Shown here in pieces: positions 4,401-48,500 of a stretch of 64,000 bases of DNA. Position 1 is the first letter of the stretch. The number at the start of each line of letters is the position of its first letter. A program made the position numbers and the translations under genes. The notes beneath the pieces were generated by a model. It saw only the letters and a program-made list of their open reading frames with translations, ran no database searches and was not told the DNA's origin. This DNA comes from Adineta vaga (lineage: Eukaryota > Animalia > Rotifera). Location of the stretch: assembly GCA_021613535.1 (NCBI GenBank), contig CP075493.1, forward strand, positions 8,556,001-8,620,000, given 5' to 3'.

Positions 4401-4868
4401 CGATAACGTGACATTCGTCTAGAACAAATAATCTACGTTCTTTTTATTAGAAGTAGAACGTGCTTAAAAGCAACATAAGTTTTTAGTAAAGTCATGACGA
4501 GCACCAGGTATAGTCTAGCATCTTCGACAGTACTTTAGAAGGACATCAGTTGAATAAGATTGAAGAGCCAGAGAAAATAGTCTAAGAAAAGAAAACTAAT
4601 ACTACCATATCCAAGGATACAAATCAAACAACTTCTTTCTAGCTAAATATACTAGACAATGCATTTCTGTTATTGAAATGAAAATATGAACTTTTCCAAC
4701 ATTTGTGAAAGAAAAGAAGAGTTGTTTAGACATGTCGAATACGCATTGTGAACGTGTCAACTTATTTTCATTGGAATTTCGTTGATAAAATTGAGAATGA
4801 TTTATTTGATGTAATTACAAAAATATATATATACATAGAAAAATCCTAGCAAAAGTCTGTTCTATAAA

Positions 4869-7800
4869 TTAGACGCTAGTTGTTTCTGCAAAGTCGTTCT
4901 TTTTATGGAGCATTTTCGACGCATGATGTGCCTGAAAAGAGATCAAACATTAGATTTATATTGTATTGAAAACATTCCGTTGAATTTTACCTGTACAAGT
5001 GAAAAACGTTGCAATTCATCGCTATTTACCATAAATCTTGGACTTTGTTCATTTGTATTATGTAATAATTTCGCAAAATTTCGATAACGCTGTGCTGTTG
5101 ATAAATGTTGAGTATGTGGTATATAATATCTAGCAATAGCTTGAGCAAATGTATCGTTTGGTGAAAGTCCTTGATCCGTATTCATTCTCATCAAATGACG
5201 TGATGGTGGACCAGCACTATCACTTGTAATTGTATTTTGACGCTGAAGACGTTGATTTTCTGTAGATGGTTCAGCGGCAAACGTTTCTGCCATGTTTTGT
5301 TTTTGTTGTCGATCAAAATATGTACGAAGAGCAATCTGAATAGAAACGAAAATTGTTTCGATTGTTAGATATTCTATAACTTACTTTCAAAAGATCTAAT
5401 GGAAAAAACCAAATAATATTCCATATCCAAACGATGGCAGCCCATTTCCAGCCACAACCATGTATATGAGTAAAACTCCAATTTGCCCATACGGCGATGA
5501 ATGTTGCAATTAATTGCGCAATAATAAAAGTACCGACTAAGACTATCGATGGTCGTTCAAGAAAAAAGAAACTATGTGAACGAGTAATGAAGATTAATGC
5601 TTGACTAATGGTTGAAACTTGTAAATAAATAATAGAATTTAACATTGGATGATTCCAACCAGGATTTGTATGCAATTGTGATGTATATTGAAAATATTCG
5701 ACACCAAATTTTTCTTGAAAAAATGTTGTTTGAACAGCAACTGTAAAGAAAACAATTGTTGATGCTGCTAAATATGTACCGTATACAATGGCATATGTAA
5801 AGATTTCTGATAAATGCCAACTATTTGGATAGGGAGAAGGTTTTACACGATCTTTCGATATTGTTAATATAGTACCGTCATTTAGAATAGCAAGAATAAG
5901 AATCTAAAGAATATGTCGTCAATTAAAGGTGCGTTTTATCATGATTGAATTACCATAAATGATGGAAAATCAAATTTATAAGCGAAGATCAGAACAGAAA
6001 ATCCAACCAAAATACGAATTGTTATTGAACATGTGTATATAGCATAATTTCGCATACGTTGAAAGATTTGTCTTGAACCAAGAATAGCTATGCAAAATAA
6101 TTTTTTCATATAGAAAATATGTTTATCAGTCAATTGTTCAAATTAGATGATCTAATCCAATTTTAAATGATATTTCCTGTTATTTGATACTTACCATCAA
6201 TAATTACCGATAAACCCGGTTCTGTTAATACAATATCAGCTGCTGATCGTGCCGCATCCGATGCATTTGCAACTGCGACACCAACATTGGCTTTTGCAAG
6301 TGCTGGTGCATCATTTACTCCATCACCAGTCATGGCAACCATATGACCCATTTTTTGTAATCGCTCAACAATTTCGTATTTATGTTCAGGATATACTCCA
6401 GCAAAGCCATCTGCATGTAAAATTAAATCATCAATATCTCGATAATTAGAATCTGATGGTGGTCCTTCTTTAAGTGTTTTTGATAGGAACATATTGTCAC
6501 CAATGCCAAGACGTCGTCCAGTTTCTTTAGCAATTGCTAATTGATCACCAGTTAACATTTTGACTTTCACGCCTAGTAATTTTTATAAATGAATGGTGAA
6601 TAAACTATGATCAATATATCTACCAAGTTGCAAGGCACGTTCAATAGTTTCTTTTGTATCTTCACGTGGCGGATCATAGATTGGTAAAAGACCGATTAGT
6701 TTAAAACCATTTCCTTTGCCATCTTTTTGTCCATCAGATACATCTTCAATTGCTACTGCTAATGCTCGTAAACCACGATCAGCAAATTGATTAACATCAG
6801 TATTTAATTGTTTGATTTGTTCATCCGTTTTATCTCGTGTGCATAAGTCAAGAATAGCATGTGACATGCCTTTACTAATTCGATATACACTTCCATCATT
6901 GACTTGTTTATAAGTAATTTCTGTTCGTTTATCAGTTGGATTAAATCTACAGAAGATCATTCAACAATTTTTATTTTGTCAAGAAAAAAGTTTCTTTTTC
7001 TTACGGTTTAAAATCTAATTCTTCAATACCATCTCGAACTTTATTCTTATCACCGTAGGTTGAAATAACACAATTATCACTAAAATAAACGAAAAAGAAA
7101 AACAGATTGAAATTCACTGTATTACATATTCATTTACATGGCATCAGAATTTTCTGATCGAGAAGCAATTGCTGCATAACGAATAATATCATCATTCTCG
7201 ATATCAGAATATTTTTTGATCGTTTCTTTATCAATAACCAGTTTATTCAATGTTAATGTACCAGTTTTATCCGAACAGAGAATAGTTACAGCAGCGAGTT
7301 CTTCAATAGCTGTCACATGTGTAACAATCGCTTTATGTTCAGAGAGTTGTCTAGCACCAATTGCTAGTGTTACAGATAAAACTGTTGGCATCGCAATTGG
7401 TATGCCACCAATAAGAAGAACAAGTATATTGTTAATACCACGACGATAATCATAATGAAAAGCAGCACTAAATATGATGATAACAGTAGACAAGGAAGAA
7501 AAGAAGAAGAAGAAGAAGAAGAAGCATATTTTAACATACTACATTACGAAAATTTCAGCAATAATAAAGATACTAATTGCAATAATACAGAAGTTACCAA
7601 TTTTAGCAAGAATAGTTTGTAAATGACCAATTTCATCATTAGCACTACCAACTAATTTAGCGGCTCGACCGAAAAATGTATTGAGACCAGTACCAATAAC
7701 TAAAACATAGCAAATTATTATTAAAAATCAAATGTAATCTTTTTCTGTTTGAGATTGATCGAAGACTCTCAATCGATTCATAGAAGAATTCGAAAACATA

Positions 7801-8700
7801 TAAATAAAAATGTTTCTTACTAACCAACTGCTTCTCCTTCGCCCTGTTTACACGTTGAACCAGAAAAAATCTCATCACCAACCTTCTTCTTGACAGGCAA
7901 TGATTCACCAGTTAATGCTGCTTGATCGACCGATACTTCTCCTTGAGCAACTAAATACAAACAATAGTGATTTATTTCTCCTTGTTCTTCTTGAAAAAAA
8001 AACATTTACCAATCAATCGAGCATCGGCTGGTATCATATCACCTAATTTTACTCCAATGATATCTCCTGCAACAAGTTCGGCAGCATCCATAACTTTCCA
8101 TTGACCATTACGTTTAACTTTTGCTTCGGGTGCTAAGGATGCCATTAATGCTTTCACTGCACTTCCAGCATTACGTTGTTCAATAAATCCAATGATCGAA
8201 TTTGCAAGAAGAAGTAAAACTATACCAACAAAATCTTCCCAATCAGGTGCTCGACCGCCACCATTCGATACAGCAATCGCAACTATAGCAGCTGCTTCCA
8301 TAACCCACGAAAGTGGATTCCACATGAACAGAAGAAATTGAATGATAGGATTTTGTGTTTTTTCTTCCAAACGATTATAACCAAACTAAATGAATAAGCA
8401 CTATGAAAATTATTTCTAAATATATTATATATTATTACTTTCTCCAGACGTTCCTTGATTTGATCATCATTTAGACCTTCTCGTTTTGTACTACAAGAAT
8501 TCAAATGATTAATAAATAATACAAAACAAAAACAATCGAAAATCGACATACTCAAGCATTTTAAACACATCACCTTCTTTCATTATTGATAGATCATACT
8601 TTTCTTTATTATACATTTCTTCTACTGTCAAATTTTTCACACCATGTTCTGGTATATCCACATTTGTGGATTTTGAATTCTCATTCATATTTGGTGCCAT
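4869..8700 (-). CDS. PMA1: P-type IIIA plasma-membrane H+-ATPase (fungal/plant type), about 13 exons
   Basis: Spliced exons give [28 protein letters not shown] (M4), CSDKTGTLT (phospho-Asp), [56 protein letters not shown] (M5 Arg) and ILAILNDGT (M6 proton-acceptor Asp). Twelve GT-AG introns join in frame. The last exon 4931-4869 ends FAETTSV*. Confidence 0.95.
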
Positions 8701-10269
8701 AATCTTCGTTATACTGAATTTATTCAATTAAAACTGACAACAGTTCTAGTCTTTCATCGGATAAACAATAGTAAGTTTTAATGATCAGTGAATACCTATG
8801 AAAATATATCTTTCGAAATAAATGAAAAATAAATGCAGTCTAAATCACTCACCGTTATAACGCAGTCTTGTGTTGTACAACACAATATGAAAGAAGAAAG
8901 AACGACGCGATCGAATATATAGATATAGAGAGGAAAGTAAGAACAGAAGAAGCACCAAGTGAACTGTGTTTGTTAGTGTTATAGAAAGGATTCTAAATTT
9001 CCCGCCTATCTATTCTTATACATAATCAAAATATATAGCGTTTATCGTCCGTCACTATGGACAAGACTTTTTTTCAAGTAACGAGAAAGAGTATACAATC
9101 AATTCAACTTGCTTGTGCATAAATTTGTTTCCTTCAAAACAAAAACTAACCGCCTTCATAATAAATCAAAATGATTATCTGTGTGTTGTCTTCCGAAGAA
9201 AAACTTTCAATAAAAGTTTTGTTAACGTTTTATATTGAGATTATCTTTCTTACACATTCATCTGAATGCAAAATTTAATGTATGTATATTCTTCGAGACA
9301 GCGCGCGCTCACACAGCAAAGAAAGAAAAAGAAGGAAAACGAGGAGCGAGAAAGAGAGATGAACGATTAACACCAAAAAAAAGAACACATAGTGGAATCG
9401 AACATATCTAGAGAAAAATGAAGCATGAGAAGTAAATAAAGGAGAACGCAAGAACACCAGAAGAAAACAAACTGAATACATGCACAATGAAAGGTAACAA
9501 ATGACATGTCATCTATGTGTGCATGTGTATGTGACAATATGTTAATAAAGATAGGATTTTCAAAAGAGAAAATCGAACGCGCCATAGTAAAATGAAAACC
9601 AAACAGATCAAATATGAATATAGAATGTGCAAGAGAAACCATCAAATACAGAGACAGAAAAAAGAAAGTCAAAAGAAACAATTTCACTTTAGTTACAAAG
9701 AGAATAAAGAAGAGCACACACTGTTATTTTCAGGCGATATAAAAACGTGTTAGGTCAAGAAAGAATAAATTACGCGAAAATTATTTCAATATGTATTTAT
9801 ATATATATTCATGTGTGCAGAAAAAGAATGAGAATGAAAAGCAACGTTCATCCGTAGATTGAGAAAGATAATAATAATGATGATGATGATGTCGTTCTAA
9901 AATCTACATGTGTGCGCACAGAAGAAACCGAATAGAAGAGAGAAAGATAGAGATTAGAAAAACAAATTATTTATAAGAGCTGATTCTCATGGATGAATTT
10001 CTCACGCCGGAAGAAAATTGAAAATAAATGCCTTAAAGGCATGAGCAACAGCACAGCAGAGAAAACAAGAGACAGAAAAAGAGATCCTAGTTTGTGACTC
10101 ACATCGAAAACACACAGAAATGCAATGTGTGTTGAGTTATTTGATTCATTTGAGGAAAAAAGAAAAAGAAAACAATCACTAAAAAGAACACATCAGACAA
10201 TAAACAAAGACACAAGACAAAAAAAATGAGAGAATGAGAGCGAAAGAAGAAGAGATTAGAAAAAGAAAA

Positions 10270-15523
<5,254 letters not shown>

Positions 15524-19305: not shown

Positions 19306-20776
19306 CATTATCAATCGTTTAGTCAATAGAAATCAACAGGACATTAATAATTCCTTTTCGCATCAGGTTACTTACAGTCAACATGTGACTTTTTTCTTCA
19401 CTCAGATCCGATTTCATATCGCACAAGACAGAATAGGCGTGTTTATTTATTTTTTCTGTATGAATATCATTGATTGGCCATTATAAAACGTTTGATCAAT
19501 GAGCTACAAAATTCTTGGTAATGCTACGGACCAGTATAGTTGATGAAATCCGTACATAATACTTTCTAAGTATTCTTAAATGCGGTGAATAGTTTTTTCT
19601 CTTCCTCTATTTCAGTGCGATATATCATTTGCTACTATTGACATAATTTTATGAAAAGAAGAAAAGAAAACGATAGAATAAGTTTTTTACATCATCGATT
19701 TTCTTAAGCTCTTTTTTTTAATAAAATACAAAGTGAGAGCAAAAATTTTCTATTTCTTTCATTATTAGACTTACCTAATCAATGCCTTTTGTGATCTTAA
19801 AATTGAATGCAATAAGCAAAATTCAAATTACTTCTAAATTCTCCTATTTTTTAAGGTTCTTTTTATCAAAAAAGTATGTATCATAGCATGTTTGATAGAA
19901 TTAAATACTTTCGAAAGAAAAATCTTTCGCTTCCTCTGCAGTTGCATTTTTCAACAAAAATTTTCGTTAATACGATATCAAATATTCGTTTTCATGTTAA
20001 TGATGGATATCATATTTGCTGTACTTCGGATGTAATATCAAATTTTGATTTCGCATGACGCACAGTCAATATCTCTGTTAACACATGACAATGTTAAACT
20101 TATTCTATCTACCGTTCAGTAAGTTTTTTTTTATTAGAAAAAAACATCTGTTAGAATAATTTTAAATGAATAATCATATGGTTATCGTCAACTGTCAAAT
20201 CCGTTCTATCTATGAAAGTTTCTTTTGTTAATTTTGTCATCAGTAATGATCCGTTCACATGGAATAGGTCTATATAGAAGTCGAATACCTGTTGTTTCAA
20301 TTATATTTCACGGTATTTATTTTCACAAAAATTCTTCTTATTTTTTCGAATTCAATAACTCTATCATTAAGTTAAGAATCTGATTGAAATAGTTGAATAT
20401 TAGACAGTGTTTTTTCTTCTAAACTTGAATATACCGTGCGATCGTTTTGCTTGTGAGTTTGTAGTATTTTCTGCTATCATTTTTTCTTCTTTCTTTCTTT
20501 CTTTCTTTCCTGGAAGGAAAGAAACCATGGATAGTGAATAGATGTAATTTACTTTAAAAGAAATCTTTTTATTGGAGCACCTCTTCTGACAAGAAATTCT
20601 AATTAGACGATGTTTCATATATAGAAAAAAGAATGTCCTGAAGAAAAGAAGAAAAAACACGTTCGCAGAAGGATGCGGATTGAAATAGCCTCACATTGAC
20701 CTACTTTTGAAAATATCTAATATCGAATGTATTTTTCATTCTAGGAGTGATTTTTCTACCTCGATTTTATCGTTCA

Positions 20777-21796
20777 ATGATGTCAACTAATAAATTAATT
20801 CTTCTATTATTCATTCATTTTATTGTTGGCATTTTGGTTGGTCATTTTATAAGTAATAAAAAAATTATATATGAATCAAATTATATCTTACCGACAGGGG
20901 CTTCATCATCGAATAAAGCATCCCAACGTTTAATCAATCTACCCTCATCACACATCGAGATTGTTAATTTTAGTAAAGCGATTAATGTCGATTTCAAATG
21001 CATGAAAACAAAAACACTTTTAAACCATTTCCACTCACATATATGTGTGTATGAATCTCAAAAAGATGTTTATGTTAGTAATTCATTTCGTGAATCAGCA
21101 TCGATTTGGGAAGAAGAAGGTGTTGTACGAATACTTCAAATGCTGCTTCGTTATCCACATCTAGATTTTATCGATATCGGAGCAAATATTGGGACTTATA
21201 CGATGTATGCTGCTGCGTTAGGACGATTTGTTTTAGCTATTGAATGTTTTGGTCCGAATGTTGAACGAATTCATCGTGCTGTTCAATTATCTAATATTGC
21301 TAATCGAGTTCTTCTTGTTCAAAATGCATTGTATACGGAATCTGGAAAATATGTCAAATTATCTAATGTTTCAACGAATGTCGGTGGACAAGAATTAGAT
21401 GTAGCTATGAGACCAAACAATAGTGAACCATTTGCAAACAATCAAAATCGTACGAATGATCCTTATTTAGTAAAAACCATCCGATTTGATGATCTCGTGC
21501 CGCTTTTACTTGAACGTAGTATGCGTGGTGCAATTATGAAAGTTGATATAGAAGGTAGCGAAAGTTTTATTGTCGAAGCTGGTAGTCAGATATTTGATTT
21601 ATTTGAAATACCAATGGTACAAATTGAATGGTTAAAAGTACGAGATTTTCCGAATCGTGTAAAAACATTAATAGATTTTTTTGTTAAACGTAATTATGAA
21701 CCGAAAACATTTCAGTGTAATTTACTCGATTTCAAACAAGTTCAACAATGGCCGAATGATTTTTGTTGGATAAAGAGAAATTTCACATTTTGTTAA
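20777..21796 (+). CDS. FkbM / Methyltransf_21 family SAM-dependent methyltransferase with N-terminal membrane anchor, intronless CDS
   Basis: FIDIGANIGTYT (SAM motif I), VLAIEC, KVDIEGSE and an N-terminal hydrophobic segment LILLLFIHFIVGILVG. First ATG is at 20777. Confidence 0.85.
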   Translation: MMSTNKLILLLFIHFIVGILVGHFISNKKIIYESNYILPTGASSSNKASQRLINLPSSHIEIVNFSKAINVDFKCMKTKTLLNHFHSHICVYESQKDVYVSNSFRESASIWEEEGVVRILQMLLRYPHLDFIDIGANIGTYTMYAAALGRFVLAIECFGPNVERIHRAVQLSNIANRVLLVQNALYTESGKYVKLSNVSTNVGGQELDVAMRPNNSEPFANNQNRTNDPYLVKTIRFDDLVPLLLERSMRGAIMKVDIEGSESFIVEAGSQIFDLFEIPMVQIEWLKVRDFPNRVKTLIDFFVKRNYEPKTFQCNLLDFKQVQQWPNDFCWIKRNFTFC

Positions 21797-22199: not shown

Positions 22200-36093
<13,894 letters not shown>

Positions 36094-45597: not shown

Positions 45598-48500
45598 TCA
45601 TTCTAGTTTTTTCAATGTGTATTGATGTGATGATGCAACATTAAGGAAAAATGGTGATTCACGATTAGGTTCAAATGTAGCTGGTCGAATTGTATATGTA
45701 CCACCAGGTATATTATCAAGTGTTAAAACACAAAATCCTGATCGATATGAACCTGATTCGGTCTTATGAAATTCTCCCGAAGAATTGGAAACTCTTGTTT
45801 CTGTACAGATAACTTCAAAACCAACTTGAAATTGTTTTGGTGCACGTAGTTCAATTTTAACTTAAAAAGAAAATGATTTGAAATCAGAATGAAAATTACT
45901 TTATTTGTACATACTATGATTATTTGCTTCACGATTCTCTAAGACAAGTTGAAAGAGTGGATTATTTTTGAACGTTGATGGATTATTTTGACAACCACCA
46001 GCAGATTTACCTTTCCATTCACCTGTTATTTCTTGTTGATAACGTGGATTATAATAATCAGGTGCTGGAGTTAAACTAAATTCACATGTCGAATAAACAC
46101 GTAAGGAATAATAAATATCAACATTTTTTTCGTATTGAGATACCTAGAAAAATGATATACAGTTTCTAGTTAAACGTATTAGATAATAAAGATGAAAAAC
46201 AATAATTTACCACAAGAGTATATAAGGTTTGTCCTTGTAAATCTGCATCATCAGTCACAAGTTTAACTAAATAATGTGCTGAATTTGTTTTCACACCATC
46301 TTGGATAGGTTTTATTTCATTTGGATAATAAACTTTATTACCACCATTTTTATATACAAATAATGTTATAAAGATTCGATTAACTGCAAAATCTTGTCGT
46401 TCTGTAATATGTCGTGTTAAAAGAATCTGTTTAAAACAAAAACTAAATGATGTATCTAGAAAAACAAATAGATGAAAAGAACAAACCCAAATCGATGCTT
46501 TAGTTTTTGGATTAACTCGAAGAACATATTGTGGATTATCACCAAGATTATAAAGATCTTTGACTGGTCCTTGTCTTGCTGGCCAAGAATTATGTATACA
46601 TGATGTATACGAAAATAATGATGGTGACCAATTCAAATAGAAATTTTCAAAATGATGACATAAACTATTATAATCAATCCAGAAGACTCCATTATCAACA
46701 TCAACTTGTAATTTTGGATCATAATTAAGTGCTTTGATTAGTTCAGGTGTCCAATTTCGAGTATCATAATCACTGAAATTACCTTTCCATTCCAAATGTG
46801 ACCAAGGATTTTTTAACATTACTAATTTATGTCCACTGATCTGACGCATATCAAGTAATGCATAAGCATGACTGGAAACAAGACCACTACGTTCTTCTTC
46901 CTCTTTAGAAAGATTTGGTGTTGCTAGATAATTTGAGAGAAATGAAGATAATAGAAGAAGAAAAATAAATAAATAAATCCTACCAACAGTAATCAATACA
47001 TGTCCAGCATGAAAACGTTCGAACATTCGATCAAATTCTTTATCTTTATCGAATGATGCTTCAGCATGATGAATAGAAACAAGTTCTGGTATCCAACCTA
47101 AAAAGATGTCATTCGATTAAGATTCTATACTAAAGATCAAATGTATAGATTCTTGATAACAGTACTAATCATAAGAGATGAGTTAACTTGATGATGATGA
47201 TGATGTATTTATCTCTAGACTCACTCATTTTTATCAGTTTCAGTACTTAAAGGTAGATATGACTAAAACAAATCAGTAAGTGCACATCAATAGAAAGAAG
47301 ATTGATTATTCTGCTGAGTATTGATGAAATATTCTTTCGAAAAAACATTTCTAGTTGAAAATGCAGACTGTAGCTATTGGATTTGTCTTAACATACCAGT
47401 TAATGCATGTAGATCAACAGTTGAATTTGAACCAGGAAAATCGTATCCACCCATGACTTTCATATATGCTTTTTCTAATAAACTAACCCAAATTTCATCT
47501 TTATTCGTCGTTGATGAACATAGTAGACCTAGAAAATGTTTATTGTAGTTCTATTTTGATTTATTTTATTGAATTTACGATTGGAACGATCAACTGGTAA
47601 TGTATCATCAATAATAACTTTTCGCCAAACACCGTTCAAATGAAAACGAATCATATATTTTCCACATGGATTATAGATTGGTTCACCTAATCGATCAAAA
47701 CGAAAAAGATTAATTGATAAATTTCTTTCCAAATCAAAAATTAACCTTGTTTATTTTGTGGATAAATAATTGATGTAATCAAACGTTTGTTAAATTTCTT
47801 TTCATATTGTACACTAACAGCAAGACTAGCAACAAATGAACAATCCGATATAAGATCTTGTTTGATGGAGAAATATGATAAAGCCATGATCATTTTTGGT
47901 TCCGACATGATTTCATCAGGTCGTGCCCAACGTGCAAAATGAGTCTGTTGTTTTGGTGCTAATTTCAATGCACCATGAGTATCATTAAATGGTGTTTGAT
48001 ATGCGAAACGTTCACGTAAATCAATATTAAAAAATGGAACATAATCACGTCCATTAATTTTCGATCCACGTCGTAAAACATCTAATTCATGTGCAGATAA
48101 TTTTGCTCGTTTATCGATAATATTTATATTTGCTTGATCAATATCAAGTGGTTGTTGTTCTTCATTTTGAATAATCTCATCACGTGGCGGAGATGGTAAA
48201 CGTACATGTGATGATGTATTGAGTTCCGTTCGTTTTAATTCTTCAGCACGTTCCAAAGCTATACGAATAATAAATCGAAACTTTTCCTAATCAATCGTGT
48301 TTTATTTTCTTACCTTGATAAGCTATTTTTTCTAATTGTTCTTTGATTTTTGCATTATCATTGGTTTTCTTTTCATTAAGACAGAGTGTGATTGCTTCTT
48401 GATATGATTTAAAAGCAGTCTCATAATGTTTTTGTTCATCTTCATTAAGTGCTTGTGTTAATAAATATCGAGCACGTTCAACACCTTTTTCTGAAGTATT

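What the first reader, a model, noticed from the sequence alone, without database searches (positions are those of the whole stretch)
4869..8700. Intact, intron-rich fungal/plant-type P3A proton pump among animal genes
Seen: a complete H+-ATPase with all catalytic motifs and both proton-transport residues (M5 Arg in SITIRI, M6 Asp in ILNDG). It is split by 12 host-style introns and sits directly next to a metazoan MARK gene. Established: P3A ATPases energise plant, fungal and protist plasma membranes and are not part of the standard animal repertoire, which uses Na+/K+-ATPase. Inference: an old, domesticated horizontal transfer. From memory, the N-terminal [14 protein letters not shown] and C-terminal [10 protein letters not shown] segments resemble basidiomycete or early-diverging fungal Pma1. 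It could give an animal a proton-motive-force system for acid tolerance, ion uptake in Na+-poor water or recovery from desiccation.
Basis: partly seen in the sequence, partly recalled or inferred. Interest (0 to 1): 0.85.

Follow-up and report, generated by a model that had tools for sequence, protein, structure and literature searches.

The report
Fungal proton pump gene in rotifer
A bdelloid rotifer (an animal) carries an intact, spliced and conserved plasma-membrane proton pump gene of the kind animals are said to lack; its closest relatives are the pumps of Mucor-like fungi, and it still has some of the fungal gene's introns.

Summary
Window 8700-4869 (minus strand) holds a 13-exon, 12-intron gene of 1008 codons with no internal stop. 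It has every P-type ATPase motif and both P3A proton-site residues.

Contigs from RNA-like public runs skip 11 of the 12 predicted introns exactly. A MARK/Par-1 kinase gene lies upstream. The same gene pair recurs in Adineta steineri and in the duplicated block on contig 4 of this genome.

The genome (100.8 Mb, 6 contigs) has five such loci. Homologues occur in Adineta, Rotaria and Didymodactylos.

The fungal guess holds. Bdelloid proteins form one clade (100/100), sister to Mucorales plus Umbelopsidales (95/99). Core identity is 73-75% to these fungi against 58% to plants. AU tests reject grouping with a holozoan, a plant or Dimargaritales. They do not reject a position outside all fungi (p 0.11).

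Window introns 1, 2 and 12 sit at exactly the positions and phases of Mucoromycota introns. Intron 3 is about 2 nt off.

Best reading: an ancient transfer of genomic DNA from a fungus, now a working proton pump family. No paper on it was found. The physiological role is untested. The scan's first stage also flagged a paralogue on another contig of this genome.

The parts
8552..8700 (-). Exon 1: start codon and N-terminal regulatory segment (the [14 protein letters not shown] stretch)
   Evidence: Gene model. The intron 1 joint 8552/8490 is seen in RNA-like contigs. It is 58-62% identical to Mucorales N-termini.
8439..8490 (-). Exon 2
   Evidence: joints 8490/8552 and 8385/8439.
8010..8385 (-). 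Exon 3: M1-M2 (including the M2 Asn) and the start of the A domain
   Evidence: It was placed as its own row inside the bdelloid clade.
7825..7950 (-). Exon 4: A domain with TGES
7543..7699 (-). Exon 5: M3
   Evidence: Its 5' border is confirmed by the joint 7699/7825. Its 3' border (intron 5, 7468-7542) lies at a masked TTC repeat and was not shown directly. The A. steineri orthologue has the same intron.
7138..7467 (-). Exon 6: M4 (PIAMPTV) and the phosphorylation site DKTGT
7005..7079 (-). Exon 7: N-domain segment
6624..6946 (-). Exon 8: N domain with the fungal-type KGMSH motif and DPPR
6195..6572 (-). Exon 9: P domain with MLTGD and [10 protein letters not shown]
5954..6087 (-). Exon 10: M5 with the Arg of SITIRI
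5385..5903 (-). Exon 11: M6 (Asp of ILNDGT) through M10
4991..5335 (-). Exon 12: C-terminal regulatory domain homologous to the zygomycete-type tail ([16 protein letters not shown])
   Evidence: It evolves fast (pN/pS about 0.85).
4869..4931 (-). Exon 13: last 20 codons ending ...TTSV, plus the stop codon
4804..8762 (-). Minimum extent of the transcript as covered by spliced contigs
   Evidence: table 8: pieces reach 4804 and 8762.
10179..14182 (-). Upstream neighbour, a MARK/Par-1-type kinase gene (kinase, UBA-like and KA1-like exons). Extent is approximate.
   Evidence: The neighbour of the A. steineri orthologue is Pkinase+KA1. A copy of the KA1 exon lies upstream of the contig 4 ATPase copy.

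Best explanation
This is a working gene for a P3A plasma-membrane H+-ATPase of the 'zygomycete' fungal type, in a bdelloid rotifer (Adineta vaga by all indications). A stem bdelloid took up genomic DNA from an early-diverging fungus whose nearest sampled relatives are Mucorales and Umbelopsidales. The fragment came with the fungal introns. At least three of them are still spliced at the same sites, and about eight more were added in the rotifer lineage. The gene then duplicated. It was copied again by the bdelloid genome doubling together with its MARK neighbour, and today it is one of five loci. Inferred mechanism: like its fungal relatives, the protein uses ATP to form an aspartyl-phosphate at DKTGT. 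It then expels one proton through the M6 Asp / M5 Arg pair, making the membrane potential more negative and removing acid from the cytosol. Activity is probably restrained by the inherited C-terminal regulatory domain, which keeps a basophilic RRFS-type site. Shown here: gene structure, splicing, conservation, phylogenetic position, shared intron sites and synteny. Inferred: proton transport, plasma-membrane location, regulation and physiological role.
For: The gene is intact with all motifs. Eleven of 12 introns are spliced out in RNA-like contigs from two studies. dN/dS against the A. steineri orthologue is 0.18. The best non-rotifer hits of a bdelloid protein are Mucoromycotina at 69-72% over nearly the full length, against 58-60% for plants. 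The window's core exons are 73-75% identical to Mucoromycotina and 88% to A. steineri P0284. In the tree, bdelloids form one clade at 100/100, sister to Mucorales+Umbelopsidales at 95/99, inside fungi at 100/99. Five window exons were each placed independently in the bdelloid clade. AU tests reject rotifer+ichthyosporean (p 7e-5), rotifer+plant (p 2e-5) and rotifer+Dimargaritales (p 3e-4). Intron sites 49.2, 67.0 and 988.0 are identical to Mucoromycota introns, and 192.1 compares with 193.0. I estimate chance at about 6e-7 for 3 of 5 exact matches. Fungus-specific signatures are present, namely KGMSH..LCTRDKT and the tail domain. The MARK-ATPase synteny is seen in A. steineri and on contig 4. 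GC content equals that of the surroundings.
Against: The AU test does not reject a tree in which all sampled fungi form a clade without the rotifers (delta lnL 22.4, p 0.113). Chytrids, Blastocladiomycota, Glomeromycotina, Zoopagomycotina, Entomophthoromycotina and Ascomycota were not in the tree. Absence from monogonont rotifers and other animals rests only on two top-120 hit lists and a tail search. The kind of the 'RNA' runs is a guess by the tool. No transport assay exists. The regulatory tail evolves almost neutrally.
Confidence: 0.8

Rival explanations
1. Vertical inheritance. A P3A gene with these introns was present in the opisthokont ancestor. It was kept in fungi and in the line leading to bdelloids, and was lost in all other sampled animals.
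For: Shared intron positions are also what vertical descent predicts. The AU test does not reject rotifers outside all sampled fungi (p 0.113). At least one holozoan, Chromosphaera, has a P3A pump.
Against: The free tree nests the rotifers inside fungi as sister to Mucoromycotina at 95/99. Rotifer plus the holozoan sequence is rejected (p 7e-5). Identity to Mucoromycotina (73-75%) is far above identity to basidiomycetes (about 50%) or the ichthyosporean (about 41%). The only named animal hits were bdelloids. This reading would need many independent losses, in a group already known for massive gene uptake.
Confidence: 0.08
2. The gene is real and fungal-derived but no longer works as an electrogenic proton exporter. 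It might carry another ion, act on an internal membrane, or act as a sensor.
For: Animals already energise their membranes with the Na+/K+-ATPase. The regulatory tail is diverging fast. Sister paralogues on contig 5 have replaced the M6 Asp by Asn, which shows that the family is functionally labile.
Against: This copy keeps every residue known to matter for proton transport. Its transmembrane exons are under strong constraint, with pN/pS 0.1-0.2.
Confidence: 0.1
3. Fungal contamination or a chimeric assembly.
For: The high identity to Mucorales could suggest a contaminant.
Against: The introns are 49-125 nt, the size of the A. steineri orthologue's introns, and eight lie at sites that no sampled fungal gene has. 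GC is 31-33%, like the flanks. The same MARK-ATPase order appears in an independent A. steineri assembly and in the duplicated block on contig 4. DNA-like contigs of a further run are colinear with the window. Homologues exist in nine or more bdelloid assemblies.
Confidence: 0.01

Closest known systems
Plasma-membrane H+-ATPases of Mucoromycotina (Rhizopus, Mucor, Apophysomyces, Umbelopsis; database name 'plasma membrane H+-ATPase')
   Same: Core identity is 73-75%. The same N-terminal and C-terminal regulatory segments are present, as are the KGMSH motif, the M5 Arg and the M6 Asp. Introns lie at 49.2 and 988.0, and nearly at 193.0.
   Different: The host is an animal. There are eight extra short introns. 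The tail carries an insertion of about 25-30 residues (EPST..Q..RR) and a terminal TT-x-V ending, which Mucoromycotina lack but Dimargaritales have. AT-rich composition like that of the surrounding rotifer DNA.
Arabidopsis AHA2 (PDB 5ksd), plant P3A pump
   Same: It is the best solved-structure match for exons 3 and 9. It shares the NGGG..PDW loop, the M4 PIAMPTV segment, and the Arg at the same M5 position (SITIRI).
   Different: Overall identity is only about 58%. Plants have KGAP where fungi and rotifers have KGMS. The plant R domain with its YTV end is not homologous to this tail. A plant+rotifer clade is rejected (p 2e-5).
Yeast and Neurospora Pma1 (PDB 7vh5, 1mhs), Dikarya P3A pumps
   Same: The same family and catalytic cycle, and a fungal lineage.
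   Different: They are much more distant (exon 3: 65-74 bits against 161 for AHA2). They lack the NGGG loop. Their M5 Arg sits at a different position according to PMC10654040.
Other horizontally acquired genes of bdelloid rotifers (for example the trehalose genes, PMC4498783; biosynthetic genes, PMC11258130; foreign gene expression, PMC3499245)
   Same: A non-metazoan gene, expressed, carrying short introns, linked to metazoan neighbours and shared across bdelloids.
   Different: This one is a primary ion pump that could change membrane energetics. Its donor was a eukaryote, and the donor's introns appear to have been kept. I found no mention of it in those papers' main text.

Membership tests
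P-type ATPase superfamily | Phosphorylated Asp in DKTGT, TGES in the A domain, and the hinge motifs DPPR, MLTGD and [10 protein letters not shown] | tested here: met
   All were read in exons 4, 6, 8 and 9. Pfam finds E1-E2_ATPase and Hydrolase.
P3A plasma-membrane H+-ATPase | Sequence groups with P3A pumps rather than with P2 or P3B pumps | tested here: met
   In the PDB sequence search, H+-ATPases score 135-163 bits against 72 or fewer for Ca, Na/K and Mg pumps. All close database relatives are named plasma membrane H+-ATPase. Tree.
P3A plasma-membrane H+-ATPase | Proton acceptor Asp in M6 (AHA2 Asp684) and controlling Arg in M5 (AHA2 Arg655), as described in PMC10654040 | tested here: met
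   ILNDGT in exon 11 and SITIRI in exon 10, aligned with the plant and Mucoromycota residues.
P3A plasma-membrane H+-ATPase | ATP-driven electrogenic H+ export at the plasma membrane | not testable with these tools
   This needs vesicle assays, yeast complementation and localisation.
Zygomycete-type fungal P3A subgroup (Mucoromycotina and allies) | KGMS in place of KGAP, and a C-terminal domain with ARYY..RNF..E[LM]RRFS.VQ | tested here: met
   Alignments. Exon 12 finds only Mucorales and Umbelopsis tails among the fungi.
Zygomycete-type fungal P3A subgroup (Mucoromycotina and allies) | Nested placement within that fungal group | tested here: inconclusive
   Sister to Mucorales+Umbelopsidales at 95/99, but the AU test of fungi as one clade without rotifers gives p 0.113.
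Dikarya Pma1 type | M5 Arg at the Pma1 position, and no NGGG..PDW loop between M1 and M2 | tested here: not met
   The window has the loop and the AHA2-position Arg. Basidiomycete relatives are about 50% identical and branch outside.
Horizontally acquired bdelloid gene | Physically linked to metazoan genes in more than one assembly | tested here: met
   A MARK gene lies upstream in the window, in A. steineri, and in the contig 4 block.
Horizontally acquired bdelloid gene | Absent from other Metazoa | tested here: inconclusive
   Bdelloids were the only animals named among the top 120 hits of two searches and in a tail-only search. Monogonont, seisonid and acanthocephalan genomes could not be searched directly.
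Horizontally acquired bdelloid gene | Transcribed and correctly spliced | tested here: met
   Eleven of 12 introns are skipped in contigs of three runs from two studies. The RNA nature of these runs is the tool's guess, but the DNA-like run shows no such joints.

The most novel reading that the evidence does not exclude
Bdelloid rotifers run a second, fungal-style proton-based way of energising or de-acidifying the plasma membrane beside the animal Na+/K+ pump. It rests on a five-gene family that arose from a single uptake of intron-bearing fungal DNA. One branch of the family (contig 5 copies, M6 Asp changed to Asn) has since evolved a different transport or signalling function. This would be the first P3A pump system working in an animal, and a clear case of donor spliceosomal introns surviving a fungus-to-animal transfer.
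Probability: 0.35. Interest if true: 0.8.

Novelty: new member of a known kind. Interest (0 to 1): 0.6.

Why it matters
Reviews of P-type ATPases describe P3A proton pumps in plants, fungi and some archaea, and the Na+/K+-ATPase as long considered unique to animals (PMC10654040). Here an animal lineage has kept an expressed, constrained family of fungal-type proton pumps since before its radiation and genome doubling. That offers a natural experiment on whether animal cells can use a proton-motive plasma membrane. Such a system could serve ion uptake from dilute water, acid extrusion or recovery from drying. The shared intron sites also bear on how bdelloids acquire genes: at least this transfer involved genomic DNA from a eukaryote, not cDNA, and the recipient spliceosome handled the donor's introns. 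The Asp-to-Asn paralogues give a built-in comparison for structure-function work on the proton site.

Tried and rejected
1. My first reading was 'plant-type, not fungal', based on the PDB sequence search and the representative search with exon 3. It was wrong. PDB holds only Dikarya Pma1 and AHA2, and the 50% clusters hid the Mucoromycota. Searches corrected it.

2. I tried to build a profile from exon pieces aligned to a full-length scaffold (A1-A3). MAFFT scattered the fragments, and the Bangia scaffold has frameshifted stretches. I abandoned this route.

3. Site-heterogeneous (PMSF) trees on 60 rows did not finish. All the trees I report use LG+G4.

4. A tail-only search found only bdelloids, so it gave no extra donor clue.

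5. The Atlas look-up was uninformative for taxonomy.

6. I considered that the terminal T-x-V is an animal-specific PDZ ligand added after transfer. This is weakened, because all three Dimargaritales sequences end in ARTTSV. It is more likely an inherited fungal regulatory end.

7. A Dimargaritales donor is rejected by the AU test (p 3e-4).

8. Six literature searches for this pump in rotifers or other animals found no report. Two further searches and three papers read did not mention it either.

9. Complex prediction and structure prediction were not used, because no claim here depends on them.

Inside one script the exons were strung together only to count codons and stops. Every search, alignment and tree used single exons by reference or database proteins.

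Full report
WHAT IS THERE

On the minus strand between 8700 and 4869 lies a gene of 13 exons and 12 GT-AG introns of 49-125 nt. The exon coordinates are listed under parts. The frame runs for 1008 codons without an internal stop.

I checked that count inside one script by stringing the exons together. The joined product was not printed, saved, searched or folded. Everything else was done exon by exon, by reference, or with database proteins.

Pfam finds E1-E2_ATPase and the HAD hydrolase domain on the exons. Read exon by exon, the gene has:
- TGES (E4)
- the M4 PIAMPTV segment and the DKTGT phosphorylation site (E6)
- DPPR (E8)
- MLTGD and [10 protein letters not shown] (E9)
- the M2 Asn (E3)
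- the M5 Arg in SITIRI (E10)
- the M6 Asp in ILNDGT (E11)

The last two are the proton acceptor and its controlling Arg, as described for AHA2 (Asp684, Arg655) in PMC10654040. Against solved structures, exons 3 and 9 match the plasma-membrane H+-ATPases at 135-163 bits, with 65-74 bits for Pma1 on exon 3. All Ca, Na/K and Mg pumps score 72 bits or less.

IS IT EXPRESSED AND REALLY PART OF THIS GENOME?

Contigs of three RNA-like public runs (X1 and X3 from one study, X5 from another under a different organism label) skip 11 of the 12 predicted introns at exactly the predicted borders. The skipped pieces end in CT..AC on the plus strand. A DNA-like run (X9) is colinear with the genome and shows none of these joints.

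Intron 5 (7468-7542) lies on a TTC repeat that the tool masks. The length of one 1184-base contig fits its removal, and the A. steineri orthologue has the same intron. The spliced contigs reach from 4804 to 8762. The tool only guesses that these runs are RNA, and I say so plainly.

GC content across the gene (31-33%) equals that of the flanks.

Upstream on the same strand lies a kinase gene with a kinase domain. It also has UBA-like and KA1-like exons, which I recognised from the translations and from memory of MARK.

Two further observations fix the linkage:
- In an independent assembly of Adineta steineri, the orthologue (P0284, 88% identical over the core exons) has a Pkinase+KA1 gene in the same place and orientation.
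- In this genome, contig 4 carries a second MARK KA1 exon at 3877621, about 8 kb upstream of a second ATPase copy at 3885788-3888679.

So the pair was copied as a block. Contamination or chimerism is effectively excluded.

WHICH ORGANISM, AND HOW MANY COPIES?

The assembly has 100.8 Mb in 6 contigs. An earlier follow-up note of this scan names it Adineta vaga. The closest orthologue is from A. steineri.

Five loci match exons 3 and 11:
- contig 1 (this gene)
- contig 4 (75-82% identical)
- two tandem copies on contig 5 (61-66%)
- one on contig 2 (63-69%)

Full-length homologues are deposited for Rotaria (four species or isolates), Adineta steineri, A. ricciae and Didymodactylos carnosus. That covers three bdelloid orders.

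Between the window and A. steineri, dN/dS is 0.18 summed over nine exons. The transmembrane and catalytic exons give pN/pS of about 0.1-0.2, and the tail exon about 0.85.

WHERE DID IT COME FROM?

My first impression was wrong. From the PDB search and a representative search with exon 3, the gene looked plant-like.

Using a full-length bdelloid protein (Rotaria P0260) as the query changed that. The best non-rotifer hits are Mucoromycotina: Rhizopus, Apophysomyces, Umbelopsis and Mucor, at 69-72% identity over 97-99% of the length. Plants reach 58-60%. Some rotifer paralogues are more distant than the fungi.

The window's own core exons give:
- 73-75% identity to Mucoromycotina
- about 72-74% to Mortierella and Dimargaritales
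- about 50% to basidiomycetes
- 58% to a plant
- about 41% to the ichthyosporean Chromosphaera

The main tree has 34 rows and 967 columns (IQ-TREE, LG+G4). Bdelloids form one clade (100/100). That clade is sister to Mucorales+Umbelopsidales (95/99). Fungi plus rotifers separate from plant, green alga, stramenopile, Ancoracysta and ichthyosporean at 100/99.

Five window exons, entered as separate rows, all fall inside the bdelloid clade next to A. steineri P0284.

AU tests give the following:
- rotifers + the holozoan: rejected (p 7e-5)
- rotifers + plant: rejected (p 2e-5)
- rotifers + Dimargaritales: rejected (p 3e-4)
- all sampled fungi as one clade without the rotifers: not rejected (delta lnL 22.4, p 0.113)

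Fungus-specific signatures agree with the tree:
- KGMSH..LCTRDKT in the N domain, where plants and protists have KGAP.
- A C-terminal regulatory domain (ARYY..RNF..E[LM]RRFS.VQ..HA) shared with zygomycete-type pumps. In BLAST, exon 12 matched only Mucorales and Umbelopsis tails.

INTRONS

I mapped exact gene models for eight fungal genes and two rotifer genes. Positions are given in the numbering of the window and its A. steineri orthologue, as codons completed, then phase.

The window has introns at 49.2, 67.0, 192.1, 234.1, 286.2, 396.2, 421.2, 529.1, 655.1, 700.0, 873.0 and 988.0. A. steineri has the same twelve.

The fungal genes have five distinct sites in all:
- 49.2 (Rhizopus, Umbelopsis, Phycomyces, Lichtheimia)
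- 67.0 (Mortierella, Calcarisporiella)
- 93.2 (Mortierella)
- 193.0 (Rhizopus, Umbelopsis, Phycomyces)
- 988.0 (Umbelopsis, Lichtheimia)

Dimargaris has no intron.

Three of these five sites coincide exactly, phase included, with window introns 1, 2 and 12. A fourth lies 2 nt from window intron 3. The fifth coincides with an intron in the annotated Didymodactylos model.

The window has 12 introns among about 3000 possible sites. By my own estimate, three exact hits out of five by chance has a probability of about 6e-7.

The gene therefore arrived as genomic DNA with its introns, or descends vertically (see the rivals). The remaining eight introns are rotifer additions, or were lost in the sampled fungi.

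The bdelloid genes hold the union of sites that different fungal lineages kept. That fits a donor branching near the base of Mucoromycotina rather than inside Mucorales.

HOW IT MOST LIKELY WORKS

This part is inferred, not shown. The protein would be a single-subunit pump that autophosphorylates at DKTGT and expels one proton per ATP through the M6 Asp / M5 Arg pair, as in its fungal and plant relatives. It would hyperpolarise the membrane and remove acid.

The inherited tail probably autoinhibits the pump and is released by phosphorylation. The conserved RRFS site is a basophilic kinase consensus.

Rotifer tails carry an insertion of about 25-30 residues, and most end in TT-x-V (TTSV in the window). 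The same ending, ARTTSV, closes all three Dimargaritales sequences. I therefore read it as an inherited fungal end, not an animal invention.

Where in the animal the pump acts, and for what purpose, is unknown.

COMPARISON AND NOVELTY

The pump belongs to P3A. Within P3A it belongs to the zygomycete-type fungal subgroup, not the Dikarya Pma1 type. It has the M1-M2 NGGG..PDW loop and the AHA2-position Arg.

Horizontal acquisition by bdelloids is well known (PMC3499245, PMC4498783, PMC11258130). Databases already auto-name the bdelloid proteins 'Plasma membrane ATPase'. Eight literature searches and the three papers I read turned up no discussion of a P3A pump in rotifers or any other animal. 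A 2023 review treats P3A as a matter of plants, fungi and archaea (PMC10654040).

I class this as a new member of a known kind. It has two points of wider interest: an animal with a proton pump family, and donor introns retained after a fungus-to-animal transfer.

The first stage of this scan also flagged a paralogue on another contig of the same genome.

LIMITS

- All reported trees use LG+G4; the mixture-model runs did not finish.
- Several fungal phyla and most holozoans are missing from the tree.
- Absence from other animals is inferred from hit lists only.
- The RNA status of the runs is a guess by the tool.
- No function was assayed.

Noticed in passing
G000:C5:5098094-5098612 and 5107128-5107646 (L008, L009): The two tandem paralogues on contig 5 have Asn where the M6 proton-acceptor Asp should be (..NNAT.. 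instead of ..LNDGT..). Their relatives in A. ricciae show the same change, and a Rotaria sordida relative has His in place of the M5 Arg. This long-branched subfamily may no longer pump protons.
   Followed up: partly
G000:C2:11239011-11241659 (L010): The contig 2 paralogue has a different intron layout. It has no intron between the equivalents of exons 10 and 11, and it has an extra interruption inside [10 protein letters not shown]. The stop reported inside the match is probably that intron.
   Followed up: partly
window 20747-21796 (+): An uninterrupted 349-codon ORF with an FkbM-type methyltransferase domain (Pfam E 3.5e-7). This could be another acquired gene.
   Followed up: no
L001:9492-11066 (Logan contig of SRR28211910): A GC-richer homologue, 78% identical on exon 3, with introns at the two Mucoromycotina sites (after ..FQLLQ and after ..DGRLVA). 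It lies beside a TOP3-like gene and an MFS gene. It is probably a Mucoromycotina-like fungus and not a rotifer. The organism was not identified.
   Followed up: partly
window 7489-7533: A TTC/GAA microsatellite inside intron 5. The reads tool masks it, which is why this one intron could not be confirmed directly.
   Followed up: partly
P0184, P0182, P0183 (Dimargaritales proteins): All three end in ARTTSV, the same TT-x-V ending as most bdelloid pumps, although the AU test rejects a rotifer+Dimargaritales clade. This may be an ancestral regulatory end that Mucoromycotina lost.
   Followed up: partly
L004, L005, L015 (Didymodactylos carnosus contigs): The deposited Didymodactylos gene models (322, 862 and 960 residues) look fragmented or mis-spliced. 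They have odd intron sites and introns of up to 1339 nt, so their intron positions should not be trusted without RNA data.
   Followed up: no
window 28804-29589 (-) and 46166-47026 (-): ORFs with ATR-like HEAT repeats and a calpain protease domain. These are ordinary eukaryotic genes and fit a normal chromosomal setting, not a foreign-DNA island.
   Followed up: no
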